A stretch of DNA of 64,000 nt from Mytilus trossulus (Eukaryota): contig NC_086373.1 of NCBI RefSeq assembly GCF_036588685.1, forward strand, positions 88,288,001 to 88,352,000. The letters run 5' to 3'. Below the pieces are notes generated by a model. That model worked only from the letters and a program-made list of their open reading frames with translations, did not search any database and was not told where the DNA came from. Every line of letters starts with the position of its first letter. Positions within the stretch are counted from its first letter, which is position 1. Below, piece by piece: positions 19,076 to 61,700 of this stretch. The position numbers and the translations under genes were made by a program.

Positions 19076-22000
19076 ATGTAGCTGTTGCTTTAGTTACTGC
19101 AAAGCACATTATTTCTGTGATATGAATATAGAGAACACATGATGTAATTGGTGAAAAGTAATTCTATGCATATTTCTGATGTTGTTTGATTGGATAATTG
19201 GTGTTTTAAAGAAGTGTTATTAATTGGTACAAAAATACCAAATAATTCATCTATCATTGCTAACTTATATAGTATTCATTAGAACCAGATTGAATTTTGA
19301 TATATATTGATATATTTAAGCATTTTTATATCAGAAATGTCTGAATGATAAATTTATACTATTAACCGGGTCTTAATCTAATCTTGAACATGCCTGTTTT
19401 TGATAGACTATAGAACAATAATGTCATCGGTGTTCCTTAACCATATCAATCATGTAATTATTGCATTAATTTAATTGATATCAATATGAATACTAAATAG
19501 AACATAGTGAAATCCAGCATCCATATTAATCCCAGGCTACAAAATGATTCAAATATTTCAGTTTATACTAATTAAAAACAGTTTTTTTCAAATAATCACA
19601 CATCTTTTTAAAATGAGTAAAATAAGATTTATACACATTTTTTTTGTAACAAGCTGTTCAAGCTTTGCAAAACTATCTTAAATATATTGAAGATATCTTG
19701 CAGTCTTTGAGTTCCTGACTCATTCTAGTATATGGGATGGATAAAAATTCAGGTAAATTTTCTAAAAGGAAAAGATAAAAGGAAGAGATTCCTTGAAACT
19801 TCTAGTCACTGAAATTCCTTCTGTTTTTATTTCAATAAACTATATACACATTATTCTATTTAGGGTTGTTAATTAAGTGTTACTTTAGATTACTTATTTA
19901 AATTATGTAGATTTATTTTATGATTTTATTGTTACAGTTATTGCCTGCTCTAAACAGCCAAACTCCTATATCCCCACAATATTTCTCAGTCCCAATTTTT
20001 CTTATTGATATTAAAATTCCAATGAAAAGCCATATTAAAATATTACCAATAATTGAATGATGTTATAAACTAATAGGTCATAAGCAGTGAAGTTATCCTC
20101 TCTTTGAATGTTAATAACTTTTATAGTATTTTAAACAATAAGTGTTAATACTTGGGCATCTAAATGTCTACATCAGAAATAAAAATCAATTATAAGTGAA
20201 CTGATTAATGATGATTGGTATGTTGAATACTGATAATGTAGCCAACAAAATAACTTTTGACATAGTTCAGTCAAGTGCATGCAGGGATAAAACTTGTTTG
20301 CTTAAAAGAAGTAGTTTTTTTCTAATTTTCTTCAGAAAGGTATTTCAAGATGTATTATCTATTGGAAAAAAGTGAGTGTTATACAAATCATGCATTTGTT
20401 TTAATACATGTACAAATATACACTTAATCTTTGCAGTTCAGTAGTGTTTGTTTTATCAACTAACCACTCATTCATAGATCTTTTGTATATAAAAACAAAT
20501 TCTAGATATTCCGCCACTCTTGCATATCGACAAAAAGGTGGCAGTATCCCAAGAAATGTAAACAATTTTGTTTTGGAAATAATGCAAAACTTTATAAAAT
20601 CAAGTACAAAACCAAAGATTGTGTTTATGCAAACTTATTATGTGCTGAATATTTTTTTTATAAAATAATTATTAATATGTGTTTTATTTTTTTCATTTAT
20701 TGGAATTTCCACTGATATATATTCAGAAAACTATGAAAAGCCAACTTTTGTTTTTTTTCATACATGTTCTTTACCAAGGAAAGTCAGGTGCATGTTATTC
20801 AATGGTCATGTTTGTTGGTTTCTGTATATTTGTTATTTCTTTATGTTTTTAGCATAAATCAGGTTGTTGTTTTTCTTTTGAATTATTCAACCAATTTACA
20901 GATTTAACTTTAATACAACATAAGAATTGACAACAGAAAGCAAATTTTTGACATTCTAGAGTTACTGTATTTTGACCCTTAGATTCGATTCAAGTTTTCA
21001 AAAAGTGTGCTTCACTAGCTTTAGTGGAACTGACTTCAAACAAACTTTACATAGTTGTTGATATTAATGAGGAAACTCAGTTGTGTTTAATTAATTTTCT
21101 GGTTTGTCATTCTAGGGTTATGAAACTTAAACTGTTACATTTCATGCAATTTTTCACAAAATACACATTGGCTTTAGTATTCCAAGGGTTGATTTCCCCC
21201 AAACTTTACATTATTTTTATTGATTGAGTGGAAAATGTACAAAAATTTGTAAACATGATTAAATGCTTTCGAATTATCCCATTTTTTTCTTGCAACAATT
21301 TCAATATGTATGCACAATAAGTGCCTCTCACTCCCTCTTTCATTCTGTATACATCTGTCCCAAGTCCGGAGCCTGTAATTCAGTGGTTGTTGTTTGCTGT
21401 TGTATGTCATATTTGTTGTTTGTTTATTGTTTAATACATAAAGACATAATTATTACAAATAGTAATATGAAGGCTGCTTCTAACCAAAACCAAAATATTA
21501 GTGGCTATGAAGCTATAGTTAGACTTTCTGATTCAAATGAATTCATGTGGTCTAATGCAAGATTTCAAAAACATGCACTTTTTGTCATTTTGAGTAAAGG
21601 ACAATGAATGACACTGAATTATATTTTGATTTAATTGATATTGTAAACTTTTGTGAAAAGTTATCAAAGGTACCAGGATTAATATAATCTTTAAAAAGAA
21701 GTATTTTGACTAAGGTTCATAAAATATTTTGATGCACAAGTCTGATTACATTTTGCATATATACCATATACAGTTCTTTTGCCTCATGGTGAGAATTCTC
21801 AGATCTGTGCTTTATGTATTGTGTATCTCTGTTAGCTATTGTTGTGCTTTGTATTGATCGGATGAGTTTAGTCCTTTTGAACTAATTTTTATAGTTTGTT
21901 CTTATGTTGTCCTGTTACACCACTATTCCAGGTTAAGGATAGACTTGGCCACCTGTAACTGTGGTTAACAATGTATGATCATTGTTGTTTTTTGCTGTAT

Positions 22001-27599: not shown

Positions 27600-27992
27600 T
27601 AAGGAAAAGCGCGTGTCTCGCGTAAATAACAAAAATCAATCCTAAACTGATATTTATGATGAGTTTATTTTCGACCACTGAGTCGATGCCACTGCTGGTG
27701 CAGCTTTAATTCCCATTCGTTAATTATCATTGATATGTTAATAATATTAAAGATCATTAAATAAACTGTTAACAAAACTTTGAATTTTTTTAAATACTAC
27801 GGCCTTTTTTACCTCAGGAAAAGATAACCTTAGCTGTAGGATTTTTTGGTCCTCAATGCTCTTCAGCTTCGTAGTTTATTTGGTTTTTAACATTTTTTTA
27901 TCCGAGCGTCACTGATAAGTCTTTTGTATACGAAACGTTTGTCTGACGTAAGTAAACAAAATCAATACTTATGTCTATGATGACTTTATTTG
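27600..27992 (+). mobile_element. Decayed retrozyme copy with mutated hammerhead (27906-27949)
   Basis: Colinear with 42905-43312 (CCACTG.GTCGATGCCACTGCTGGTG, AGATAACCTTAGC, CCTCAATGCTCTTCA); core reads CTGATAA instead of CTGATGA and loop-III palindrome is lost. Confidence 0.8.
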
Positions 27993-34600: not shown

Positions 34601-37294
34601 TTGAAGAAACAGTGGATTAAACCATTCAAACAAAGAATGGTAAAGTCCAACTCTGAGGTCTTTTTTACGTAGTGATGTAACAAGTTCTCCTTAAAAAGTA
34701 TAAGATACTTTTAAACATCAAAGCATAGAATTGTCTCAGTATATTCACGATTTGGCAATATGAACCGAATTCAATTCGCATCAAAGGAACAAAAGGTGTT
34801 TCTTTCATTTTTCCTTAGATTTGTTTTGTTCAAAAGATTCTTTAATGAGAGGTACTGACACCGCTATATATATGTGTGTATCGAATAGTTATCAAATGTA
34901 CCAGGATTATAATTTTAATTTTAATAATTTTTATCGTAAAACATAGAAAAGTCCGTTTCTTGGTATAAGAAATAAAAAAGTATAAAAACTTGATGCTTTT
35001 TGTTTTAGTCATCAACGCCAAACAAATAATCAGCAAGCATGTGTATTAAATTATTAATATTCAAATATTTTGTTTCGATATCTTTTTGTAAAGCTGAAAC
35101 GAACGTACCTACGATATCCCTTTTTGGACCGACTGCCATAGAATTCCAATTAAAAGAGTGGTTAGAAGGCCACATTGTAAAACCTTCATGATGTTTAGTC
35201 GTAAATACCACATACCTGCAAATAAAAATACAAAATATCGTTTGCAATAACATTATAGTATTTTTCACAAAAGTTTTTAAAGTAGACAAAATTCAGTAAT
35301 GACCAACTAGAGTATAATGACGCAAGAATTTTTTTCTTAATTTGTCTACAAACAAGAGTGCACACACTGAAATATCTCGCCTTCTTTACTTGTTATTGAT
35401 ATTATGTTGATAGTCCTAAATATAAAGCTTTATTACAACTGTCACATAAACTTAAAATTAACCAATAAAACTAAACATTGACCAATCAACCATGAAAATG
35501 ATGTCAAGGTCAGATGAACCATGCCAGACAGACATGTACAGCTAAAAATTCTTCCATACAAAAAATATAGTTGACCTATTGCTTATAGTTTAAGAAAAAC
35601 AAACCATAACACAAAAACTTAACAATGAGCAATGCACTGTGAAAATGAAGTCAAGTTCAAATAAAACCTGCGCGACTTACATATATATCATAAAGTATTT
35701 CCATACGCCAAATATAGTTGACCTAATGTATTTAGTATTAAAAAAAAAAGCAAAACTCAAAATCATAACTTTTGACCACTGAACCATGAAAATGAGATCA
35801 AGGTCAGATGACACCTCCAGCTAGACATGCACATCTAACATTCACCCATAAACCAAATATAGTAAACCAATTGCATACAGTATAAGGAAAACAGATCAAA
35901 ACACAAAAACTTAACTTCAACCACTGAACCATGAATATGAGCTGAAGGTCAGATGACAAATGTCAGTTGGACATGCTCACCTTACAGTCCTTCCATATAG
36001 TGACGAAGAATGAAATCAAATGTGCACTTGGAGGTATAAAGTAATAACGAATTCTTAAAGAACAAGTTTCATACAGTCCTTCCATACACCGAATATACAA
36101 GATATATTGCTTATACCATCTGATATATGAACTTGACCACCAAAACTTAACCTTGTTCATAGATCCATGAAATGAGGTCGAGGTCATGACGGACATGAGG
36201 ACCTTGCAAGGTATGCACATATCAAATATAGTTATCCTATTACTTATAATAAGAGAGAATTAAATTAATCTTATTTTTTTTCCAAGTAGTCATTGAACCG
36301 TGAAAATGAGGTCAAGGACATTGGACATGTGACTGACGGAAACTTCGTTACATGAGGCATTCCATATACAAAGTATGAAGCATCCAGATATGCCACAAAA
36401 TATGCAGGCTCGACAAAAACTGGTTACCATTGATCATATAAAAACTTACATAAGACACAAATCAATTTACATTTAAAAATATTTTCCTTCCGCCTTTATT
36501 GATACAGTATCACGATACCATTCAAATGTTTATTTAATAGTTTGTTAGTTTCAGAAGGTTATTGATTTTTAAACACGGAAACATGCAGTCCAAATATAGA
36601 AGAAACATCAATATTTTATGATTTTACAGCTTGCCAATAACAACCATAGATACATAAGAGGTAGCAATTGTTACAAACGTATTTTTAGAGGGGTCCTCAC
36701 TCAATGACATTATATTGTCTTTAAAGGAGTATTTTTTTTACATGCATATCAAATATGTCAAATTATGTACCTTATTCGCAAAATAACGAATAGCAAATTA
36801 TTGTGAGTAATGTTTTTACATACAACAGAAGTTACACATTATCCGGCTTGATAAAGTTGTGTATCTACTTACTCTGCACCGGATGATTTAAATAGTGATG
36901 CCCATTCATCCGTATCTAAAAACTCAGCTGTTAACATGGGAGCAAAGTCTGGGTACGTGAAACCGGGTCTGTAGTTTTTCTTCATGAACTCTACATATTT
37001 TGGGATCTTATCTCTCTTCCAGAAACACCAAAACCATTCGTCATACACACTAGGAACAGAGTAGACTCCCCAGACAACAAATATTCCTATTTTAGCACTG
37101 TCATACCAAACTGGTAGAGGCCTTTTGTCTAAAGCTTCCCAGTTTGGAGGATACAGTTTATCGCCTTTGTTCCATTGTTTTACGATGTTAAATTCCTCCA
37201 CTATATTCTGACTTTGACTGCTAAGTTCAACTGTGTATGGACATAACAATATCAATATCCACGGTATAATACTAACGTCTTTAGTGGTCAACAT
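28662..37294 (-). CDS. FUCA: Alpha-L-fucosidase (GH29) paralog A, 8 exons, 482 aa, divergent active-site pocket
   Basis: Exons 37294-36873, 35215-35109, 34689-34562, 33283-33153, 31464-31367, 30304-30172, 29766-29596, 28920-28662 (1449 nt, GT-AG, in frame). Signal peptide, [37 protein letters not shown] nucleophile, [22 protein letters not shown]. Confidence 0.93.
28975..29172 (+). mobile_element. Short dispersed repeat (same subfamily as 53398-53590)
   Basis: GGTGTGAGCCAAGGCTCCGTGTTGAAG..CCTATAATGGTTTACTTTT..GGATGGAGAGTTGTCTC; near-identical inverted copy at 53398-53590. Confidence 0.75.
29725..29860. repeat. 68-bp tandem duplication spanning the exon 7 acceptor of fucosidase A
   Basis: Units 29725-29792 and 29793-29860 differ at four positions. 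Confidence 0.9.
30536..30888. repeat. Local ~185-bp tandem duplication
   Basis: ATTGAAGTGAAATAAAAGAAAAAA..GTTTGCTTGATG at 30536 and again at 30721. Confidence 0.85.
30899..31200. mobile_element. Non-autonomous element with a ~157-bp palindrome (31043-31199)
   Basis: Arms AATGACTGTAATATTTTTTCTGTCTA / TAGACAGAAAAAATATTACAGTCATT and GGTGCACACTG / CAGTGTGCACC around AATAACC..GGTTATT. Confidence 0.6.
33655..34155 (+). mobile_element. 3' fragment of a non-LTR retrotransposon (RTEX-like)
   Basis: [37 protein letters not shown] Cys/His C-terminal motif; AATAAA then TTTGAATTTGAAT tail at 34135-34155. Clade call is tentative. Confidence 0.7.
35350..36419 (-). mobile_element. HINE-type element with ~145-150-bp internal tandem units
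   Basis: Recurrent AACCATGAAAATGAGGTCAAGGTCAGATGA units; minus-strand 5' end TTTTTGTCGAGCCTGC and 3' end GGCGAGA..GTGTGTGCAC-TCTTGTTT. Confidence 0.7.
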
Positions 37295-42400: not shown

Positions 42401-42703
42401 AAATAATTCATTAAAACCAAAAAACTTGAATTTTTCACAATTGTTCCGTTTCCATGGTAACGGAATCCATTTTTATGGTCTTAAGACCTACAGCAACCCG
42501 AAATTTTGTGTTCCTCATTACAGTTAACTATCATTAAGATTGGTTCCATTGTCTCCGAGAAAACTGCCGGACAAAATAGGTGGCAGAATAATAATAGAAG
42601 AAAAGCAATATGTCACCCGACATTGTCGATCGGGTTACATAATAAAAATAATAAGAACTGAGCAAAAACAATAAGTCTCCAAACTTTGTTTGGGAGACTT
42701 AAT
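39488..42703 (-). mobile_element. Composite HINE: outer element with ~120-bp tandem units hosting two nested copies of a second HINE family
   Basis: 17-bp subterminal IRs AAGTCTCCCAAACAAAG (39510-39526) / CTTTGTTTGGGAGACTT (42684-42700); 3' hairpin GTAACAG-GATG-CTGTTAC; nested copies about 40768-41527 and 41528-42642, each bounded by AACTAGA..ATTGCAAGCAATAGCGGATG.CACCC and ATGTCACCC..GGGT..CAT. Confidence 0.8.
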
Positions 42704-42878
42704 TAAACAGTTTTTTCTACACAAATGAGGCTAAAACTCGTGCAGATGATGTAGCACACAACAGGAAAATTAAACAATTTCCTATACATGAATGAGGTTA
42801 AATCACACAACTTGAAATTTAGATTGTTTTCTATTTATTTTTATGTATTTATTTGGCTTTTTAACTATTTTGATCTGA

Positions 42879-42922
42879 GCGTCACTGATGAGTCTTATGT
42901 AGACGAAACGCGCGTCTGGCGT
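42879..42922 (+). ncRNA. Minimal type-I hammerhead ribozyme (copy 1)
   Basis: GCGUCA-CUGAUGA-GUCU(UAUGU)AGAC-GAAA-C(GCGC)G-UC^UGGCGU: full catalytic core, stems I and II, palindromic stem-loop III; predicted cut after C42916. Confidence 0.9.
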
Positions 42923-43233
42923 ATAAAATTAAAATCCTGGTACTTTTGATAACTATTTACACCACTGGGTCGATGCCACTGCTGGTGGACGTTTCGTCCC
43001 CGAGGGTATCACCAGCCCAGTAGTCAGCACTTCGGTGTTGACATGAATATCAATTATATGGTCATTTTTATAAATTTTCTGTTCACAAAACCTTGAATTT
43101 TTCGAAAAACTAAGGATTTTTTTACCCCAGGAGTAGATAACCTTAGCCGTATTTGGCACAACTTTTTGTAATTTTGGTTCCTCAATGCTCTTCAACTTTG
43201 TATTTATTTGGCTTTTTAACTATTTTGATCTGA

Positions 43234-43277
43234 GCGTCACTGATGAGTCTTATGTAGACGAAACGCGCGTCTGGCGT
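43234..43277 (+). ncRNA. Minimal type-I hammerhead ribozyme (copy 2)
   Basis: Identical to copy 1; predicted cut after C43271. Confidence 0.9.
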
Positions 43278-43384
43278 ATAAAATTAAAATCCTGGTACTT
43301 TTGATAACTATTCTTCATACAAATGAGGTAGATCATTTCTAGATGTTGAAGTCCACAACAGGAAAATAACAATGAACGAGGTTG

Positions 43385-43750
43385 TTAAATTTGATATATA
43401 CCTTTTTGTGCTTCTTTGTTTCATATTTGTTTGTTTTAACAGTATAACACCATTTTAACTGTTGTTCCTCTATATTTTACGTTTTTATCCATCATGTCAG
43501 TCTGTTTTGTTCGCACAACATTGCCAATATAATGGAATTTGATGCGATTATTGTACAAGAGAGAGGTTTATCCAGCTATAAAACCAGGTTCAATCCACCA
43601 TTTTCTGTAAGAAAAAAGTGCCAGTACCAAGTCAGAAATGCGACAGTTGTTATCCATTCGTTTGCTGTAAAAGCTTTTGATTTAACACTTTGATAAGGGA
43701 CTTTCCGTTTTGAATTTTCCTTGTAGTTCAGTATTTTTGTGATTTTTTTT
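43385..43750 (+). mobile_element. Dispersed repeat of the AAGTCAGGAATATGACAGTTG family
   Basis: Homologous to 1275-1460, 24950-25330, 25635-25785, 48905-49020, 50210-50510, 63050-63175. Confidence 0.7.
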
Positions 43751-44722
43751 TTTTTCTATACACAAATGGGGTTGAACTTAAATGAATGATGTCGCACACA
43801 ACAGAAAAGTTATATTGTTTCTATACAAGAAAATATCTTAAAGATGTCGCAGATACCGGTAAATTTTATTGTTTTCTATAATACACAAATGAGGTTAAAA
43901 GTCCTGTGATGATGTGGCACACAATATAATAATATTGTTTTCTTTACAAAAATGAGTAACAAACATATATCATGATGTCGCACACACCAGGATAATTATA
44001 TTGTTATTGTCTTTTATTAACACAAATGAGGTTAGAACTCATGTAGGTGACGTTGGATAAAACTGGAAAGTAATATTATTATTTTTCTATACACACATGA
44101 GGTTAGAACTCATGTAGATGATGTAGCACATAACAGGAGAAAACTAGAGTTTCTATACACAAATGAGTTTAGAATATCCCAATGGTGTCGCACTCAACAG
44201 TAAAATATTGTTTTCGATACACAAATAAAGATAAAACATATCTTGATGATGTTGCACACAACAATAAAATTATATTTTATTCGATACACTAATGGGGTCA
44301 TCCAACTACAAAGGTTTGATTAAATAAAACGTGTAGGTGTTTGTGTTCTCCCGGCTTACATTTTACATAATGCTATTTATAATTTGAGGTAATAATGACA
44401 TGCAGTACCAAGCATTAGTTTGTTTTGAATAATCAAAATGACTAAAAATGTTGCAAATGATATGTAATCAAAATCTTATATATATCATCATATTTTGTAA
44501 AGAGAGGCGAAAGATACCAAAGAGACAACGTCATAAGTCGAAAAAAACCAGACAACAACATTGCTAAAATAGAAATAGGCAAACAACAATTCAACAAAAA
44601 CAACATAGAAAGCTAAAATCTGAGCTGCATGTACTCCACCCAAAACTGGGGTTGATTTCAGGTGCTCAGACAGGGTACGTAGATCCTGATCTATATGTGA
44701 AGTTATGATTTTAAAAGCTTGA

Positions 44723-46909
44723 GATTGATCTGGATGTCTAACGAATATAAGATTGATCTGGATTTCTAACGAATATAAGATTGATCTGGATTTCTGACGA
44801 ATATAAGATTGATCTGGATATCTAACGAATATAAGATTGATCTGGATTTCTAACGAATATAAGATTGATCTGGATGTCTAACGAATATAAGATTGAACTG
44901 GATGTCTAACGAATAAAAGATTGATCTGGATGTCTAACGAATATAAGATTGATCTGGATGTCTAACGAATATAAGATTGATCTGGATGTCTAACGAATAT
45001 AAGACTGATCTGGATGTCTAACGAATTTAAGATTGATCTGGATGTCTAACGAATATAAGATTGATCTGGATGTCTAACGAATATGAGATTGATCTGGATT
45101 TCTAACGAATATAAGATTGATCTGGATTTCTAACGAATATAAGATTGATCTGGATTTCTAACGAATATAAGATTAATCTGGATGTCTAACGAATATAAGA
45201 TTGATCTGGTTGTCTAACGAATATAAGATTGATCTGGATGTCTAACGAATATACGATTGATCTGGATGTCTAACGAATATAAGATTGATCTGGATGTCTA
45301 ACGAATATAAGACTGATCTGAATGTCTAACGAATATAAGATTGATCTGGATGTCTTACGAATATAAGATTGATCTGGATTTGAAACGAATATAAGATTGA
45401 TCTGGATTTCTAACGAATATAAGATTGATCTGGATTTCTAACGAATATTAGATTGATCTGGATTTCTAACGAATATAAGATTGATCTGGATTTCTAACGA
45501 ATAAAAGATTGATCTGGATTTCTAACGAATATAAGATTGATCTGGATGTCTAACGAATATAAGATTGATCTGGATGTCTAACGAATATAAGATTGATCTG
45601 GATGTCTAACGAATATAAGATTGATCTGGATGTCTAACGAATATAAAGATTGATCTGAATGTCTAACGAATATAAGATTAATCTGGATGTCTAACGAATA
45701 TAAGATTGATCTGGATGTCTAACGAATATAAGATTGATCTGGATGTCTAACGAATATAAGATTGATATGGATGTCTAACGAATATAAGATTGATCTGGAT
45801 GTCTAACGAATATAAGACTGATCTGGATGTCTAACGAATATAAGATTGATCTGGATGTCTTACGTATATAAGATTGATCTGGATTTCTAACGAATATAAG
45901 ATTGATCTGGATTTCTAACGAATATAAGATTGATCTGGATTTCTAACGAATATAAGATTGATCTGGATTTCTAACGAATATAAGATTGATCTGGATTTCT
46001 AACGAAAATAAGATTGATCTGGATGTCCAACGAATATAAGATTGATCTGGATGTCTAACGAATATAAGATTGATCTGGATGTCTAACGAATATAAGATTG
46101 ATCTGGATGTCTAACGAATATAAGATTGATCTGGATGTCTAACGAATATAAGATTGATCTGGATTTCTAACGAATATAAGATTGATCTGGATTTCTAACG
46201 AATATAAGATTGATCTGGATGTCTAACGAATATAAGATTGATCTGGATGTCTTACGAATATAAGATTGATCTGGATTTCTAACGAATATAAGATTGATCT
46301 GGATTTCTAACGAATATAAGATTGATCTGGATTTCTAACGAATATAAGATTGATCTGGATTTCTAACGAATATAAGATTGATCTGGATTTCTAACGAATA
46401 TAAGATTGATCTGGATGTCCAACGAATATGAGACTGATCTGGATGTCTAACGAATATAAGATTGATCTGGATGTCTAACGAATATAAGATTGATCTGGAT
46501 GTCTAACGAATATAAGATTGATATGGATGTCTAACGAATATAAGATTGATCTGGATGTCTAACGAATATAAGATTGATCTGGATGTCTAACGAATATAAG
46601 ATTGATCTGGATGTCTTACGAATATAAGATTGATCTGGATTTCTAACGAATATAAGATTGATCTGGATTTCTAACGAATATAAGATTGATCTGGATTTCT
46701 AACGAATATAAGATTGATCTGAATTTCTAACGAATATAAGATTGATCTGGATGTCCAACGAATATAAGATTGATCTGGATGTCTAACGAATATCAGATTG
46801 ATCTGGATGTCTAACGAATATAAGATTGATCTGGATGTCTAACGAATATAAGATTGATCTGGATTTCTAACGAATATAAGATTGATCTGGATGTCTAACG
46901 AATATAAGA
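44723..46909 (+). repeat. 28-bp tandem satellite, about 78 copies
   Basis: Unit GATTGATCTGGAT(G/T)TCTAACGAATATAA head-to-tail with no spacers. Confidence 0.97.
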
Positions 46910-47581: not shown

Positions 47582-50500
47582 TTATGAATTGAGGAGATTT
47601 GAAATTTTAAATGTCCATGCCCATTTACAAGGCATCTGATTGTATGGTATTGAGGGAATGTTTATTAGCATGCCTCTAGAAGGTCCTTTAGCCCATGTGA
47701 AAGACATGTCTGAACCTAGCATTTGAACAGTCGTGTCCTTAGAAGGTACAGGAGCTCCGAGTAGTAAGGTATCTTTTTCTGGCCACTGTAACACTATTGC
47801 ATAAACTGTCTTTACTGAGTCTATAATACGTTCTGTGTACCTGTAAAACATTATCTGGTTTTAGTTAAGCTGTAACTGTTATGTCAGTTTCTATTTTCTG
47901 ACAATTTTCAAATGGTAATCAGATGTAAGTTGTCAATTGATTTCTTTAATCTGTTTTAATATAAAATCCCCCCCCCCCTCTTATTTGGTTGTGTCTGCGA
48001 CTAACAACAAAAGTAGGCGAGACACTGGGTTCGGCGGAACCCTTACGAGTTTTATTGAAATTGCAATAAAAAAATGTTTATCATTTTTAAACTGTATTTT
48101 TTTTTAATTGCAATCAGAGAAATGTTTTGTTATGAAGTCAACTTTTATAATATACAGTACATAACTCTTCTATTAATTGTTATCCTTTCGTTGATACAGT
48201 TTACTGCTAAATGCATTGGTCATGAAACACGAAAAGAGATAGTAGTTTTGCAGTTTTGATATCTTTAAAATAGTGAAATTGGACTCACCATACTTTTGGG
48301 GTTAAAGTGTCATTTTGAAATTTCCATGGTACAGTAGAATATATTGCTTCGCCATTTACTTTTAGCCATTCTCCCATTTGACTGAGTCTCTCTTGAAAGA
48401 TCGGCTTTATTACGCCATCATGAGAGGGTCCAACATTCACAAGAATGTTTCCTCCACAACTAAAACAATATCATTATATGTTTAATCCTCAAACAGTATA
48501 CTTGAAACGTGAGTACTCAATGTTCATCAATCAAAAACAGCGAAAGCAATACATTTGTTTATTAACTTGGTTTCAGTAACAGTTTTGTAAATTGCCAATA
48601 ATATGATTCCGCAATCTGTATATGATTTTTTTCTTCTTATTCATCGAATAAATTTAAGTCATTAAAATACTCTTTGTTTTTTTCTTATAACATTATTTTC
48701 AAGAACAACACATTTTGAAAACGATGAAATTTTGAAAGAAGAATTATTATAGCATGCTTCAATTAGTGATAAATTTTCAGATCTATTGCTCTGTAACTTC
48801 CTGTTACCCGAATATTCATAATCAGGGTATCAATAGCTTGATAATGAAAATAGTAGAATCATATTACAATATCATACCAGCTATCACTAGAATTTTGTAA
48901 CATCGATAAGTCAGGAATATGACAGGTTTTTTTTACATTTGTTTGATGTGGTTGAGCTTTTGAAATTGTCATTTGATAAAAAGACTTTCATTTTGAATTT
49001 TCCTTAAGAGTTCGGTATTTTTCTACACAGAAACTCTTTGGATTGGATAGATTATTACATCATAACACGTATTACCTGACAGTTTCTACAATAGTATCAA
49101 TCAGTTGTTCAATAGATAGATAGTCACTTAGGTTAGCATTTCTTCTGTATCCCCAGGACTGGGAATCTATTGTCATTGCATTTTCCCATTTTCGGCTTTG
49201 TAATTTACCTGAAATCATTAAATTCTGGATTAAGTCATCTATGCATCTGATGTAAAGGTTTGTGAATAAACAATTTTGCAACATAATAAAACTTTTGAAA
49301 TTCTCTTTCATGATTGCTAAAAAAAGACCAGCAAAACAAATATTCAGTTACTCTTGATTTGGCAAAAGTTTTAGGAATTTTGGTCCTCAATGCTCTTCAA
49401 CTTCGTACTTTGTTTGGCCTTTTAAACTTTTTTGGATTCGAGCGACACTGATGAGTCTTTTGTAGACGAAACGCGCGTCTGTATACAAAATTTAGTCCTG
49501 GTATCTATGATGAGTTTATGGATACCGAAAAACCTTTTTAAATGAAAGTAAATGCTATTGACTGTAATTACCTGGATTGTATCTGTCACTACATGTAAAG
49601 TATCCCCCATGTTTACACATAACACCACTGCCCCATCTGTCATTAGTGACAATACTGTCTTTCACAGGACTTTAAAATAGTAGAAAGAAAACATTAAGTC
49701 ATTTATATAGTATAGTGTACATGTAAAAGGCATGTTATGTTATAGTCAGATGGAACTTTTGACACTGCCCGAGTGAAATATATTTGAACTCTGTAAAATT
49801 ATGATGGTAATCTTGCTCTAAGTGGTATATTCTTATTATACTCTCTGTATGCACTCCAATTATCAGTTTATATACACACCTGTCGTTGTAGAGCCATGCT
49901 ATAAACTCTGTGGAATTCCAGTAAGTGTCTAAAGCTTCCCAGTCACCGTCAGACCATATAACATCTGGTTTGTAAGTATTTACAAGCTCGTATAATTCTG
50001 GCAGGGTTTTACTCTATAAGAACCAATAGTACAGTGTAATCTTATGCACATCAATCTTCTTTTCGATACATCAACATTACATTCTGATCAAAAGTACTGT
50101 TAAAAAAAGAGGGACTGATGAAGTCCTCAAATTCTGTACTTCTTTTGTCGGTACCTGATCGATTAACACCTCACCAAAATATGAATGTACAATATCAATT
50201 ACGGCTATGACTACAATATGACTGTTGCACCCCTATTTTTGACATCTTTACCTATTATTATGTCTGCGTGTTTTGTTCACACATCGTGTAAGTGTAATGG
50301 AATTTAATACAACCGTCATACAAGTGAGAGGTTTAGCTTGCTATAAAACCAGCAATTATATACAGAGGAAAATGCTTGAACAATTTCAGGAATATGACAG
50401 TTGTTATCCATTCGTTTGAGGTGTTTGACATTTTGACTGTGCCATTTGTTTAGGGAATTTTCGATTTGAATTTTCCTCGGAGTTAAGTTTTTTTGTGATT

Positions 50501-53500
50501 TTATTTTTTTAGGTGAATACTATACACATTTTGTTGGTAAAATGTGCATTTAACCTTCATCTAGTACATTCGAAACTAACCGAGTCTAATTGCTGGGTTG
50601 CACATAATATTGATTAATAATGAAAATGTGTCTACACGTATAGGAACGTTTAAATATATGGAAACATAAACTGAAAATTACGGAGTTCCGATGGCAGAAA
50701 AATCAGGAACAATTTCCTAATAAATAGCTGGTGATATTCTACGATTCGGGTACAATATTTCTTGTAGAATCAAGCTTCTAAGTTTTGAATTGTAACAAGA
50801 GTTGATGACACAAAATAGCGACCATTCTTTGTAAAATTAGCAACAGAATTACTATATTTCCTAATCTGAAAAAAAAATACGTCACATCTAACAATTCGAT
50901 AATAGCAGGTCCTCAGATTCCCATATACGAGCAATCTATTTGTAAGGTTTTAATCATTATTGATAGATATCTATAGGAGTTCATTTACCAAAATGACGTT
51001 CCAAAGTCTTAGAGTATGAGGGGAATCCATTATTCCATAATAGTGTCCCCGCATGTCAAACAAATCCATACTATAAGGGGTCTATTAAAACGTAGCAGTG
51101 ATATTCGCCTGGGATCAAGCTTTGCTTGCATCATCTGCAAATTCAATGTTCAATATATCATTGAGCTTCGAAAATCTTGAACGTCAAATGGATTAACATA
51201 ATTTTTCGTAGGGGCGAAACACAGAAAGCTAAAACAAAGGTGAAAGTTACTAAGGGGACATTGAAAAACGCATACGTCGAAGTAAAACTGGCAACACAAT
51301 GACAAAAACACTGCAGTGACAAGATTGCCTTAAACTATTCACTGTGTTTCATCGCATTTACTCTGATTCCTTCAAATGTTTAGGTCTGGGCGTTTTGATG
51401 AAGCCGGTAAATCCAGAAATGAGCTACGGACAAACGAAATTTATCAAGTGTTCATTTCATTTGCATGTATTTCCCATGTATCTTAAGACATAGAGTATTT
51501 ATATATATGTGATATTCTAAATACGTCAATAAATTATACCTTCACGAATTGTTGTGTTCGGAATTTGTTTTCTTTGTCTTGTAAATACAGAGGATGAAAC
51601 CACTCAAATAAAGAATGGTATAATCCAACATGTAGATTTCTTTTACGAAGTGCTGTACTCAACTCACCTGAAAGATATATAAATCTCTCAGTCACATCAC
51701 AACTTTTTTTCTGGTGACAATTTAATGGACAGTTAATTTTTGATTAATAAATGAGAGATATGAATCTAACGTGCCACCCAAAGCAGTGGAAGGACTTGCA
51801 TCATATTTGTTTCATTCACAGGAGTTGTCTTGATTTTACATTTACCGAATTAATCTGTCCAATACTTACTCACTTTAACAATCAAAAGGTAATTTTACCC
51901 TTGATAATTTGTAAAAATATATATAAATAATAAAAACTTTATGTGTTTTCTTTGCATTAAAGAATATAAATCAATCTAAATTCTGATAAGCACTAAAGTC
52001 TATCGATTCAATCATTTTGCAGAGCATTATTTTGCAGAGGGAACTGAAAATTAAACATTGCATTGTATTTAGCAATGGAAGGCAATTATTTGGACTGGAT
52101 TTAGAGCTGGTACATTTCGTTGCTATATTTAGAACAGTCTGATACATTCTATACTACTTTTGTTATTTTCAGTGAAATAGTTTCCTTAACAACTGTTGTT
52201 ATATACACAATTTTTAAACTCGAATATCTGAGTGATGTAACATTGAAAAATTGTTTAATATATAAGATAGATGTAAAGATTACTCATCTTAATGAACTAT
52301 GTTTTGTGTTTTCAAAAGTAGTGACAATCCTTACCCCCAAAACATATTAATTTGTTACTAAATGACAATACTGTTCTACCTATGGGCTATCTTTTTGATT
52401 TAAAATATCATTCCTATATGTATATAATCTCTCTTAAGACTATTAAGAATTTTTTGTCCAGAATTTGATAAAATATTGAAACTGCAGTAATGAGGGGGGA
52501 TAGGACCTTTATCGGGACTCGAGATCTGTGTTTTTAAGCTGGGGATTTCGGGATTGACACCTTCGGAATTTGGGAATTCCTTTTCGAATATCGGGATGTC
52601 GGGAGTTAAATTTATTTAAATTCCGGACCTCAGGATTTCGTGTTTTTAAGCCCGGGATTTCGGGATCAGGACCCCCTCCTATCCCCCCTCAGTATTAAGT
52701 AATTTTAAAAAGCGTTCAAACATTTAAAATTTTATGAAATTCAATTGTTCACAGGTTAAATTAAAAGGCCCATGAATGAAGCAGCATATATACATAATGT
52801 AACATATGGTACCATAAATCTAGGTTTACACTTCAGGAAAATGACTCAGTTTGTAAAATAAATATGTGGAAACTGGCCCTACGTATTTTAAGAAAGTTGC
52901 TTAGAGTTAGTAATACATATTTCCAATGTGAACATATTGAGAATTCACTCAGTGCACTATTGATGCATTGACCATACTGAACATTGGTATATATAACATT
53001 AACAGTACACTTTTTAGTACACCAGCAGCACAATTTAACAATAAATATTCAGTGATGCTGGAGGCCAAAATATTAGAAATCAACAACCTATATGTCTAAT
53101 GTTGATGAACTGATCAATCTTAAAGATTGGAAAAATCCTGACAATGAATCAGAGCTTTGCATAAGGAGATATCTTCCTTAATTTAAAATTATTTACAAAT
53201 TTCAATAACAGCTAATTACAATCAAAAAATATCATTACTTTTTTGCCAGAACCAAAGTACTAGCTACTGAGCTAGTGATACCCTAGGGAACAGCCCATCA
53301 ACTGTGGAAGCAGTGGTCATAATAAAATGTGTGTACTAAGTTTTTGAAGTTTTTAAAATACATGTCATCTAATTTCAATATAAGTTACAACTTTTTAGTA
53401 GATATAGGAAGATGTGGTTTTAGTGCCAACGAGACAACTCTCCATCCAAATAACAATTTATAAAAGTAAACCATTATAGTTTAATGTACGGCCTTCAACA

Positions 53501-58785: not shown

Positions 58786-61700
58786 CTAAGAATTTGTAAG
58801 ACCTGTCATTTTAAAAACCCATGCCCATTTACAAGGCATTTCTTTGTATGATATAAATGGAATGTCAATATGTATTCCTCCAGAGGGATCAGCAGTCCAT
58901 TTCATTGGTGTGTTATAACCAAGCATAGTAACATTTGTTTTATCTCCAGTAATAGGCCCAGCTAATTGTAGCTTGTTATTATGTGGCCATTTTGTTGCAA
59001 TAGCATAAACTGATGTTTTTTCGTCAATGTTTCGTTTGGTGTACCTACAATAACACCACAAAAAGGCATTAAAATGTATCTTCAAACAAAATGTTTGTCA
59101 TTTCTAATTAATTTCATTTATGTTATCTTAATATTTTTATTATCAGGTGGAAAGTTAGAAAATAAAAACTAGTTACTGAAGTGAAACAATATAATAGCAG
59201 TGTTACATCTCAATACTTATCTGAAGCAATTGTATGTTACCTTAAACTTAATGCCAAACTTCAACGATCACCTTTCTATGTTTACAAAACTGAAAAATCT
59301 TTGCCAAAACTCTATTGGCATATATCGATAACCCACTTCATGATTTTCAAACTTTTAAGTTTCAAATTGATGTAACCACAAACTATTCTCAACCAAAGCG
59401 TTCGGTTGAGAATTGTTTAAACTTTAATATTTATTTACTAAAACCAAAACTTTTACCTGCATGAAGAACAGTATAAAACCTAGGATTTATAAAATTAAAG
59501 TATGATATTATAAATACAACTTTTCTTTTAACAAAGAATAGAATAAATACGCCTTGTGTATTTATTCGTTTTCGTATCATGTTTAAAATTTACGCTGATC
59601 ATACATGGCAATTGTTGTGCCATACTATCTTAATATTTGTGTATTTCCAAATAGGGAACCTTTACTACAAGTGGATTCAGGCTATTACGGTTGGAATTTT
59701 TTTACCGCACACTCTTTTCTTAAGCACCTTGATCAACGGACTTCTTTTATAACACATATCAGCATCACCGCAAAGAAAGTTCTTATAAAAAAATCATGCT
59801 GACGTCATCTACGACCTTATATAACCTTAGTCTTAATTTCCGTAGAATCTAAAAAGAAATCCGTATTAATTAAGTCCTAGAATATTTTAGGAAGTTTTAC
59901 AACCACAAGATCGTTGCCACTACGTGGACGTTTTGTCTAAGAAGATATCACAATCCAAGTAGTCTGTAATTTTGTATTGACATGGCATATCATTGCATTT
60001 ATCATTTACTGTCAATTAACTGTGAATGAATTGTTGAATAAATCGAAACTCCGAAATGTGTCTACCCCATGTATTGTATTGCCATATATAGCCGTGTCTG
60101 ACACAATTTTTTCGGAATTTTGTTTTTTAATGCACTTCAGTCTGTTGTTTTGTTTGACATTCCTAATGATTTGGTTCTAGGACGACCATTGAGTCTGATG
60201 TAGTTGAACCGAGATTCTGATATAAGCCTTTTGTCGATATTTATAATAAGTTACAAATTTCATAAAACTAACAAGATTTTTACTAAAAGGAGAGGTTTAC
60301 TTTATTTTACAATAGCTGTACTGCTTAAGATAGTGATATGTATTGATCAATCAATGTCAAATTTTATTTTATTATTTTATTTATTCCAACAGTACTTATA
60401 TAAACGTAACATACCAAACATGTTCATTCACAGCATCATTCTGGAAGTTCCATGGAATAGAAAAATAAATCGCTTCGCCATTTACTTTCAACCATTCTCC
60501 CATCTGCCTTAATCTTTCTAAATACACAGCAGCAATAGTGCCATCATGAGCTGGACCAATGTTTATTAAAATATTACCTCCGCAACTGAATAATGAATTA
60601 TGTAAATTTCATGTGTTTTTAAGAGTACTTTTTATGTTGTAGTTACTACCAAAAAAAAGAGGTTAGTATGATGAGAATTTCTTCCGTTTATACAAAATGT
60701 CTTGCAGGGTATTTGTCAACGGAGTAGAATTATTGCAATACAGTCTTTTATGTGTTGAGGATGAAAGCATTTGTCTGTTGGCATGCTACGTTTATTCAGA
60801 TTTAAGATATGAACAATAAAGCTGGTTATATTTCTGATACTTGTAACGATAAACAAGACTTATTGTTTTATTAACTTCATTGGATATGTAAAACATATCA
60901 GAACGAAACTTGGCTACTACATTTCATATAGGAAACCATGATACAACTGTTTTCCTCTACAGTAAGTTTGTGTGCTATTTACACCATTATGTTGCCAAAT
61001 ATGTCATTTTACCACAAAGAAAATTCGGTGTCGTCAAAGTTAATTCAAGGCTGCAAAACTTTATAACTGTTTCAAATCACTGGCGAAATGACTTTTCGGT
61101 CTTTATTCCTTCGATACCAGAAGAGTCAACGGATCTGTAACTTGACCTATTGTGACGCATTCATTTAACTGACCGTGGATTCGTATTCCAGAAGAGTCGA
61201 CGGATCTGTAACTTTACCTATTGTGACGTATTCATTTAACTGAGCGTGGATTCGTATTGCAGGTAATGAATGCTACGTATGTATGTGACCTTGATTTGTA
61301 TCTTCTTAATCGATTAGTGGAGAATTAAACAACTGTAAACTGTTGTTGCCTTAAGTTATGGGAAAAAAAACTTTCACTGGATCATAATCGAACAGCTTTT
61401 CAAACGTAAACGTTTAAATTAGTCAGTTCTGAAGTCAATTTTCTAACATGAATAAAAGTTAGTTACAATGTAACACGCTTTAACCGTTAAACGAAAATAA
61501 TTTAAGAAAGAAAGTATACAAACATTACTGTTAGTTGCTGAAGGTAACGAAATACGAATTTATCATTTGAACAGATTAGCAGTATTACCTACTGGGAAAA
61601 TGAAGACTAACCCAACAAAAAATCATCAATAAAAAAGCTACAAACTGAGTAAAAAATGGATATGAACGTTTTACTTACTGCTACTAGTATATTGTAAATG

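What the first reader, a model, noticed from the sequence alone, without database searches (positions are those of the whole stretch)
42844..43312. Intact double-hammerhead retrozyme predicted to release a 355-nt circular RNA
Seen: two identical 114-bp direct repeats 355 bp apart, each with a complete hammerhead core (CUGAUGA, GAAA, GUC cut site), 6-bp stem I (GCGUCA/UGGCGU), 4-bp stem II and a tiny stem III whose sequence ACGCGCGU is self-complementary. Known: minimal type-I hammerheads with palindromic loop III occur in Penelope-like elements and metazoan non-LTR retrozymes, cleave best as dimers, and give viroid-like circRNAs; mussel retrozymes of similar size have been reported as far as I recall, so the class is not new but this locus would be invisible to gene annotation. 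Inference: one transcript provides both halves of the dimer, cuts at 42916 and 43271, and perfect repeat identity means a recent RNA-templated insertion.
Basis: partly seen in the sequence, partly recalled or inferred. Interest (0 to 1): 0.9.

Follow-up and report, generated by a model that had tools for sequence, protein, structure and literature searches.

The report
Known mussel hammerhead retrozyme copy
This is one intact 469-base, 1.3-unit copy of an already published and extremely abundant mussel mobile element whose RNA cuts itself with a hammerhead ribozyme and circularises; it is ordinary for this genome, and this copy shows no sign of being transcribed.

Summary
Two perfect 114-nt direct repeats lie 355 nt apart. 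Each holds a complete type-I hammerhead (Rfam RF00163, 33.0 bits, E 2.8e-6), with cuts predicted after 42916 and 43271.

It is not new. The element belongs to the Mytilus retrozyme superfamily of Cervera & de la Peña 2020. The published clone Mg353 has the same ribozyme apart from one loop base. The exact 32-nt ribozyme occurs 11,823 times in this 1.3-Gb genome, in arrays of up to about 70 units. This scan has also flagged the family many times on other DNA of this genome.

Family RNA is abundant, mostly of the ribozyme strand, and reads run across the cut site. No read enters this copy's flanks, and its marker bases appear in at most about 1-3% of reads. This locus is therefore probably silent.

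Across about 50 insertions the 3' end is fixed about 41 nt past the cut, while 5' ends vary. One class stops at stem III, leaving 44-nt mini-insertions. No target duplications were found. The last 27 nt are shared with a hammerhead-less Naiad Penelope-like element, a candidate mobiliser, but in the Naiad this block is internal.

Verdict: already known, low interest.

The parts
42844..43312 (+). Whole retrozyme insertion: 1.32 units (unit positions 283-355, then 1-355, then 1-41, counting from the first base after the cut)
   Evidence: flanks are unrelated to the unit
42844..42957 (+). Direct repeat, copy 1 (114 nt)
   Evidence: 100% identical to copy 2
43199..43312 (+). Direct repeat, copy 2 (114 nt)
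42879..42922 (+). Hammerhead ribozyme 1 (type I); predicted cut between 42916 and 42917
   Evidence: Rfam RF00163, 33.0 bits, E 2.8e-6; all 12 pairs standard
43234..43277 (+). Hammerhead ribozyme 2 (type I); predicted cut between 43271 and 43272
42864..42941 (+). Hammerhead 1 with its extended stem I: distal helix 42864-42874 paired with 42928-42941, across an internal loop
   Evidence: constrained fold
42917..43271 (+). 355-nt unit that double self-cleavage would release; 38% G+C, no ORF of note
43272..43312 (+). 41-nt 'tail': the first 41 nt of the next unit, ending at the family's fixed insertion 3' terminus
   Evidence: 3' ends at +39 to +46 in nearly all independent loci; solo tails exist
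43286..43312 (+). 27-nt terminal block (+15 to +41), shared at 25-26 of 27 with a Naiad-type Penelope-like element; also present at 42931-42957
49357..49515 (+). 5'-truncated solo copy of the sister retrozyme family (the type of the published clone Mg353). Hammerhead core at 49448-49479, stem I reduced to 3 bp; it ends about 36-40 nt past its cut site

Best explanation
The locus is a non-autonomous, non-coding retroelement of the metazoan 'non-LTR retrozyme' class. It is a member of the published Mytilus family. Shown: it is a 1.32-unit copy whose two identical hammerheads bracket a 355-nt unit. Inferred from family architecture: the copy was made by reverse transcription of a circular or multimeric retrozyme RNA. 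Synthesis began at a fixed internal site about 41 nt downstream of the ribozyme cut, ran once round the unit across an intact (uncleaved or ligated) cut site, and stopped at unit position 283 (5' truncation). The 114-nt repeat is simply the overlap of 1.32 turns, so its two copies were identical at birth. From the literature on the family: transcripts spanning two ribozymes self-cleave after GUC, and a host RtcB-type ligase circularises the monomer. These circles can reach about 1% of total mussel RNA. For this particular copy the evidence points to a silent 'fossil' and not to a source locus. The most likely mobiliser is a Penelope-like element reverse transcriptase, and a young Naiad-type family that shares the terminal 27 nt is the best candidate. 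That last step is inference.
For: Ribozymes and repeats. Family: 130 scored matches at 94-100% identity from 3,234 candidates; 11,823 exact copies of the 32-nt ribozyme, with arrays at 354-355-nt spacing of up to about 70 units. Published identity: M. galloprovincialis has about 5,000 type-I hammerheads in two families, repeats of 350-390 bp, circRNA up to 1% of RNA, and kobs about 0.1 per min (PMC7229834); clone Mg353 shares the ribozyme and the central domain. Insertion polarity: in about 22 independent loci the 3' ends lie at +39 to +46 and the 5' ends at 18, 27, 38, 52, 91, 116 ... 323, with 1 to more than 9 units. Eighteen further loci start at position 353 with lengths of 44-53 + n x 355 (n = 0 in 12, 1 in 3, 2 in 2, 3 in 1). 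Seven start exactly at +1, two of them bare 41-nt tails. The window copy's 7 minority bases are shared with 3-25 of 52 other units, one of them inside both repeats, so they were in the template. RNA: depth of 100-950 across 42872-43279, zero in 42736-42837 and 43348-43381; the strand bias fits ribozyme-sense RNA; reads cross the cut site without a pile-up of ends. Partner: the GIY-YIG search gives 615 candidates, about 20 with intact 1056-aa frames. The L066/L067/L071 family has the Naiad hallmarks and carries the 27-nt block. L033 is a Naiad-derived junction holding the retrozyme's +1 to +41 at 41 of 41. A 2026 preprint shows retrozyme-pLTR homology in Xenopus.
Against: Self-cleavage and circularity were not tested for this sequence. 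RNA-seq cannot tell circles from multimers when arrays of 70 units exist. The Rfam score is one bit under the gathering cut-off. The 355-nt circle folds no better than shuffled sequence (z -1.18). No target-site duplications were found, so there is no classical insertion signature at the flanks. In the Naiad the shared block is internal: more than 90% of about 480 genomic copies run on into at least 30 nt of Naiad sequence. It is therefore not a shared extreme 3' end, and it could be a captured retrozyme fragment and not a recognition signal. The RNA runs come from other individuals of the same species label.
Confidence: 0.88

Rival explanations
1. One reading: this locus is itself an active source that is transcribed across both ribozymes and releases a 355-nt circular RNA.
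For: Both ribozymes are intact and identical. Family RNA is abundant. 203-309 reads per run are at least 99% alike to the locus.
Against: Depth is zero in both flanks in three RNA runs. Reads reaching 43312 continue as unit sequence, not as flank. At 42932/43287, 43084, 43092, 43121 and 43169, 97-100% of reads differ from this copy, and its alleles are shared with other genomic units anyway. Only 35 nt lie upstream of the first ribozyme inside the element, so a promoter internal to the unit would not include both ribozymes.
Confidence: 0.07
2. The 1.32-unit structure is not an insertion. It is a remnant of a longer tandem (satellite) array reduced by unequal crossing-over or deletion, or a local duplication.
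For: Long arrays of the same unit exist. No target-site duplication was found. The locus lies in repeat-rich DNA.
Against: The 3' end falls at the same nucleotide as in more than 40 other loci on different chromosomes with unrelated flanks. The same ~70-nt host repeat lies on both sides, as expected for an insertion into it. Random array erosion would not give a fixed end.
Confidence: 0.04
3. It is the terminal repeat (pLTR) of an autonomous Penelope-like element and not a separate non-autonomous element.
For: PLE pLTRs carry type-I hammerheads, and PLEs insert as partial tandems with a 30-40-bp tail. A diverged Naiad 5'-region relic starts 63 nt downstream, at 43375-43758.
Against: There is no RT or GIY-YIG coding sequence in the window. 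The unit forms pure 355-nt arrays genome-wide. The Naiad family that shares the block has no hammerhead in the loci examined, in line with Craig et al. 2021. The host ~70-nt repeats lie on both sides of the insertion, and the Naiad-like segment is common, at 7 per 64 kb.
Confidence: 0.02

Closest known systems
Mytilus galloprovincialis non-LTR retrozymes (Cervera & de la Peña, NAR 2020, PMC7229834; clone Mg353, hammerhead families A and B)
   Same: Same ribozyme: stem I, core, stem III and cut site are identical, with one loop-2 base different from Mg353. The central domain is shared, the unit size is 350-390 nt, G+C is low, copies occur as tandems or dimers, and the RNA is abundant.
   Different: The window copy belongs to the sister family of the cloned Mg353; the Mg353 type is the solo copy at 49357-49515. 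This chromosome-level assembly holds about 11,800 exact ribozyme copies, against about 5,000 motifs reported from the 2016 draft.
Amphibian satellite-2 and axolotl retrozymes
   Same: Type-I hammerhead in ~330-350-nt tandem units. A short stem III with a palindromic loop allows a double hammerhead.
   Different: The amphibian ribozymes need the dimer for good activity. The mussel ribozyme has a 2-bp stem III plus tetraloop and cleaves as a single motif in the published assay.
Penelope-like elements, in particular Naiad-type (Craig et al., MBE 2021, PMC8557442)
   Same: Partial-tandem insertions, frequent 5' truncation, a 30-40-bp tail, and target duplications that are often not discernible. 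A 27-nt terminal block is shared with a resident Naiad family.
   Different: The retrozyme has no ORF. Naiads lack canonical hammerheads. In the Naiad the shared block is internal and not the insertion end.
Xenopus retrozymes as non-autonomous PLE derivatives (Li, Clavereau & Pollet, bioRxiv 2026, 10.64898/2026.07.22.740005)
   Same: Retrozyme sequence is similar to PLE terminal regions, and the two co-occur.
   Different: That work concerns vertebrates and Neptune/Poseidon PLEs and does not cover mussels. Here the similarity is only 27-41 nt, and it is to a Naiad.
Plant LTR retrozymes
   Same: Non-autonomous retroelements whose RNA is released by two hammerheads and circularised.
   Different: The plant elements have type-III ribozymes inside LTRs, a PBS and a PPT, 4-bp target duplications, high G+C, and Gypsy mobilisation. 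None of these apply here.

Membership tests
Metazoan non-LTR retrozyme | Type-I hammerhead with the conserved catalytic core and a GUC-type cut site | tested here: met
   RF00163 full-length match, 33.0 bits, E 2.8e-6, found twice; 12 of 12 helix pairs are standard. One bit below Rfam's gathering score.
Metazoan non-LTR retrozyme | Ribozyme-bearing units of 150-450 bp in direct or tandem repeats, from dimers to long multimers | tested here: met
   355-nt spacing here; family arrays of 1 to about 70 units.
Metazoan non-LTR retrozyme | No LTR, PBS, PPT or coding capacity; low G+C (below 45-50%) | tested here: met
   38% G+C. The longest ORF is 80 aa with a TTG start on the opposite strand. PBS and PPT were not searched for specifically.
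Metazoan non-LTR retrozyme | Expressed as unit-length linear and circular RNA | tested here: inconclusive
   Family RNA is abundant and reads cross the cut site, but short reads cannot separate circles from multimers, and this locus itself shows no transcription. Circles are shown by northern blot and RT-PCR in the literature.
Metazoan non-LTR retrozyme | Self-cleavage of the ribozyme | not testable with these tools
   Published for clone Mg353, which has the same core and helices.
Published Mytilus retrozyme superfamily | Sequence homology to the cloned M. galloprovincialis element | tested here: met
   Compared by eye with the Mg353 sequence printed in the supplement: the ribozyme differs in one loop-2 base and the central domain is shared.
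Minimal (PLE/Terminon-type) hammerhead | Very short helices without an extended stem I or loop 1 | tested here: not met
   Stem I is 6 bp, followed by an internal loop and a further 8-11-bp helix. The 2020 paper separates the type-I hammerheads of retrozyme repeats from the atypical minimal variants of PLEs.
Autonomous Penelope-like element | ORF with reverse transcriptase and GIY-YIG endonuclease | tested here: not met
   No ORF in the element; the Naiad protein finds nothing in the window.
Naiad clade (for the candidate partner L066/L067/L071, not for the finding itself) | N-terminal GIY-YIG, CxC motif, GxKF motif, DKG changed to DKA, no canonical hammerhead | tested here: met
   Pfam GIY-YIG at E 5.7e-8 near the N-terminal end of the frame. 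The CDC, GPKF and DKA motifs are in the translation, read against the criteria of PMC8557442. No hammerhead in those loci. The RT domain is cut off by the locus end, so it was seen only in part.

The most novel reading that the evidence does not exclude
Mussel hammerhead retrozymes are copied by the reverse transcriptase of hammerhead-less Naiad Penelope-like elements. The enzyme would start at one fixed internal site (+41) of a circular or multimeric RNA, next to a 27-nt block shared with the Naiad. The GC-rich stem III of the ribozyme would act as a strong stop that leaves quantised insertions of 44 + n x 355 nt. The two kinds of Naiad junction that carry retrozyme pieces ending exactly at +41 (the 27-nt block, and +1 to +41 in L033) would be template-switch scars of that enzyme.
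Probability: 0.35. Interest if true: 0.5.

Novelty: already known. Interest (0 to 1): 0.15.

Why it matters
For the finding itself, very little. It is one of thousands of copies of a published element, and it is probably silent. It is a useful reminder that gene annotation and Rfam's default threshold both miss the family, since the score is 33 bits against a cut-off of 34. The family-level by-products have some value for specialists, because how animal retrozymes are reverse-transcribed and by which enzyme is still only hypothesised. Three observations bear on this: a fixed internal 3' end, 5' ends that pile up at the ribozyme's stem III with the template continuous across the cut site, and a terminal block shared with a young Naiad element. 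Together they give concrete, testable handles on that mechanism. Earlier follow-ups of this scan reached similar conclusions on other copies in this genome.

Tried and rejected
(1) Rfam at gathering thresholds on the whole window gave nothing. This is explained by 33.0 bits against a cut-off of 34.
(2) I tested whether insertion 5' ends spike exactly at the cut site (+1), using junction patterns. The counts were 8 at +1 and 19 at position 353, against 15 at a control position. Two other controls were swamped by related families that share those segments (396 and 58). Several control hits also look like 1-nt deletion variants. Enrichment is therefore unproven. What stands is that 7 of the 8 and 18 of the 19 are genuine ends.
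(3) A target-site duplication search found 2 of 21 loci with at least 5 nt, the same as mismatched-pair controls.
(4) I first read the shared block as the Naiad's extreme 3' terminus, in the manner of a SINE/LINE pair. This is rejected: more than 90% of about 480 genomic copies continue into Naiad sequence for at least 30-49 nt.
(5) Physical association of retrozymes with PLEs: 4 of 30 PLE loci hold retrozyme pieces (naive P 1.7e-4). The reciprocal test is confounded by a very abundant Naiad-leader-like repeat, so no claim is made.
(6) I considered the window's retrozyme as a chimera with the Naiad relic at 43375-43758. This is rejected, because the host ~70-nt repeats lie on both sides.
(7) L033 as an intact partner is rejected: it has no ORF longer than 61 aa.
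(8) The circular fold is not more stable than shuffles (z -1.18).
(9) The hammerhead is not exceptionally conserved within the family (rank 89 of 355 windows).
Hairpins are predicted at that place in both the retrozyme and the Naiad leader, but they are no more stable than shuffles (z -0.01 and -0.89), and there is none in L033.

Full report
**1. The observation**

There is one family of two 114-nt direct repeats, 42844-42957 and 43199-43312, 100% identical and 355 nt apart. A 32-nt hammerhead pattern matches at 42885-42916 and 43240-43271, and once more at 49448-49479, with none expected in 100 shuffles.

Rfam at curated thresholds is blank for the whole window. A local permissive search gives Hammerhead_1 (RF00163) over the full model at 42879-42922 and 43234-43277, at 33.0 bits against a gathering score of 34, E 2.8e-6.

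All twelve helix pairs are standard. Stem I has 6 bp including two G-U pairs, stem II has 4 bp, and stem III has 2 bp closed by GCGC, so the 8-nt stretch ACGCGCGU is a palindrome. Cleavage after GUC falls after 42916 and 43271, which gives a 355-nt unit, 42917-43271.

Stem I runs on through an internal loop into a further 8-11-bp helix. This is a canonical type-I hammerhead, not a minimal one.

**2. What it is**

The 355-nt unit is a high-copy repeat of this 1.3-Gb genome. A search gave 3,234 first-look candidates, and the 130 scored matches were 94-100% identical, occurring as single units and as tandem arrays. The exact 32-nt ribozyme occurs 11,823 times, including arrays of about 15 and about 70 units at 354-355-nt spacing.

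The literature settles the identity. Cervera & de la Peña (NAR 2020, PMC7229834) described about 5,000 type-I hammerheads in two families in Mytilus galloprovincialis. These lie within 350-390-bp repeats and are expressed as circular RNAs at up to 1% of total RNA. A cloned genomic copy self-cleaves at about 0.1 per min.

The clone Mg353, printed in their supplement, has the same ribozyme except for one loop-2 base, and it shares the central domain of the unit. Mg353 is of the sister family, the type represented in the window by the 5'-truncated solo copy at 49357-49515.

The element has no ORF of note and 38% G+C. It is therefore a member of a known family in what is evidently a Mytilus genome. 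The scan's own notebook holds 287 notes on hammerhead retrozymes in this genome.

**3. Is this copy active?**

I laid raw reads from three RNA-seq runs of the same species label on 42600-43600. The results were:

- Depth is 100-950 across 42872-43279.
- Depth is exactly zero in 42736-42837 and 43348-43381.
- Reads that reach 43312 continue as the next bases of the unit, not as the flank.
- The strand bias in the two stranded runs is 4- to 9-fold, and under the usual library convention it corresponds to RNA of the ribozyme strand.
- No pile-up of read ends is seen at the cut sites. This fits circles or multimers, but it cannot tell them apart.
- Most reads are only 95-99% alike to this copy.
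- At 42932/43287, 43084, 43092, 43121 and 43169, 97-100% of reads carry the other base.

Those minority bases are shared by 3-25 of 52 other genomic units. They are subfamily markers that were already present in the template, and one of them lies inside both repeats.

The family is therefore strongly expressed, while this locus shows no transcription of its own. Only 35 nt of element lie upstream of the first ribozyme, so a promoter inside the unit could not place both ribozymes on one transcript.

**4. How the copy arose**

In about 22 independent loci from the first search, the 3' end lies at +39 to +46 after the cut, mostly at +41 and ending in GATAACTATT. The 5' end lies anywhere in the unit (18, 27, 38, 52, 91, 116 ... 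323), and there are 1 to more than 9 units. The window copy fits this pattern: 5' end at unit position 283, one full unit, and 3' end at +41.

Eighteen further loci begin at position 353, three bases before the cut and at the foot of the GC-rich stem III. Their lengths are 44-53 + n x 355. Twelve have n = 0, three have n = 1, two have n = 2 and one has n = 3. Seven loci begin exactly at +1, and two of these are bare 41-nt tails. The window has another solo tail at 34884-34917.

I read this as reverse transcription that starts at a fixed internal site. It often crosses an intact cut site, so the template was circular or an uncleaved multimer. It ends at random, at stem III, or, when the template was cleaved, at +1. 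Whether 353 and +1 are enriched over other positions could not be proven, because the pattern controls were noisy.

No target-site duplications were found beyond mismatched-pair controls. This matches what Craig et al. 2021 report for Naiads.

The 114-nt repeat is the overlap of 1.32 turns, so its identity at birth is expected. Zero differences now bound divergence between the repeats only below about 2.6% at 95%.

**5. Who copies it**

The 2020 paper suggested Penelope-like elements, and a 2026 preprint shows retrozyme-pLTR homology in Xenopus.

This genome has at least 615 GIY-YIG candidates, about 20 of them with intact 1056-aa frames. One family (L066, L067, L071; copies 99% alike) has the Naiad hallmarks, judged by the criteria of Craig et al.: an N-terminal GIY-YIG domain and the CxC, GxKF and DKA motifs.

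At the junction between its upstream partial copy and its body, this family carries a 27-nt block that is 25-26 of 27 identical to the retrozyme's +15 to +41, and the similarity ends at the retrozyme's terminus. Two older mini-units in L066 lack the block. L033, a degenerate Naiad-derived junction, holds the retrozyme's whole +1 to +41 at 41 of 41 at the same place.

My first reading, that both elements share an extreme 3' end, is wrong. More than 90% of about 480 genomic copies of the block run on into Naiad leader sequence for at least 30-49 nt. The block may be a shared recognition signal, or it may be a retrozyme fragment captured by template switching and then spread with the Naiad. Either reading links the two elements, but neither is proven.

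**6. Ribozyme mechanics**

The monomeric hammerhead fold is weak: -9.6 kcal/mol when enforced, against -12.9 for the unconstrained minimum. Two ribozyme segments pair into a double hammerhead with an 8-bp stem III at -29.5, against 2 x -9.2 for two separate monomers.

It is not required, since the single-ribozyme clone Mg353 cleaves. The 355-nt circle is 60% paired but no more stable than shuffles (z -1.18).

**7. Surroundings**

The copy sits inside a stretch of ~70-nt repeats that lie on both sides of it (42711-42843 and 43313-44174). A 74-77% relic of a Naiad 5' region lies at 43375-43758. That segment is common, at 7 per 64 kb, so the adjacency carries no weight.

**8. Verdict**

The element is already known, and the scan has met it many times on other DNA of this genome. 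Earlier follow-ups there reached the same reading.

Noticed in passing
window 49357-49515 (+): A 5'-truncated solo copy of the sister retrozyme family (the type of the published clone Mg353). Its hammerhead core is intact, but stem I is reduced to about 3 bp (GCGACA against TGTATA). It ends about 36-40 nt past its cut site, the same architecture as the main family. RNA reads of this family also appear as loose ends.
   Followed up: partly
window 34884-34917 (-): A 'solo tail': only +8 to +41 of the retrozyme (94% identity), ending at the usual CTATT terminus next to a (TA)n-like tract. It lies inside the region another note calls a fucosidase paralog, so it is probably intronic.
   Followed up: partly
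window 27666-27937 (+), 59896-60211 (+), 21652-21680 (-), 53251-53291 (-): Older, diverged retrozyme fragments (67-91% identity). Together with the other copies, the window holds about seven retrozyme-derived pieces in 64 kb.
   Followed up: no
window 42711-42843 and 43313-44174: An array of ~70-nt degenerate repeats (60-90% alike) on both sides of the retrozyme. Within it, 43375-43758 is 74-77% similar to the 5' region of Naiad elements (L067 705-994, L079). It is probably an old Naiad-derived non-autonomous element into which the retrozyme inserted.
   Followed up: partly
window 44722-45500: A 28-nt tandem repeat, 27.8 copies, 95% matches, running to the end of the stretch examined.
   Followed up: no
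window 42600-42700: A short transcribed repeat on the opposite strand to the retrozyme RNA (depth 60-150). Many reads continue into (AGA)n-like sequence not present here. It contains a perfect-looking hairpin (AAGTCTCC...GGGAGACTT), part of which also appears in the flank of L006.
   Followed up: no
L066 1-578, L071 1-578; genome-wide: Hammerhead-less tandem mini-units of 263-305 nt, built from the Naiad 5' leader and its 3' region. The leader word occurs about 1,700 times in the genome, often at 263-290-nt spacing. This is a retrozyme-like tandem non-autonomous element without a ribozyme. The leader holds a TATA-like box and a palindromic TGACGTCA site.
   Followed up: partly
L055 around 1490-1510: A retrozyme copy with a 12-nt internal deletion that removes the 3' half of the hammerhead core (the sequence jumps from loop 2 to GTC). 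This is a dead ribozyme in an otherwise typical copy.
   Followed up: no
genome: About 20 GIY-YIG/PLE copies have identical-length intact 1056-aa frames on many chromosomes. Some are in pairs about 4.3 kb apart or in head-to-head pairs, which suggests very recent PLE activity.
   Followed up: no
genome: A third context for the retrozyme's central domain: about 396 copies in which the conserved 24-mer at unit position 81 is preceded by ATT and not TCG. They have unit spacings of 337, 364-368 and about 1,100-1,470 nt, so the retrozyme families are mosaics that share modules.
   Followed up: no
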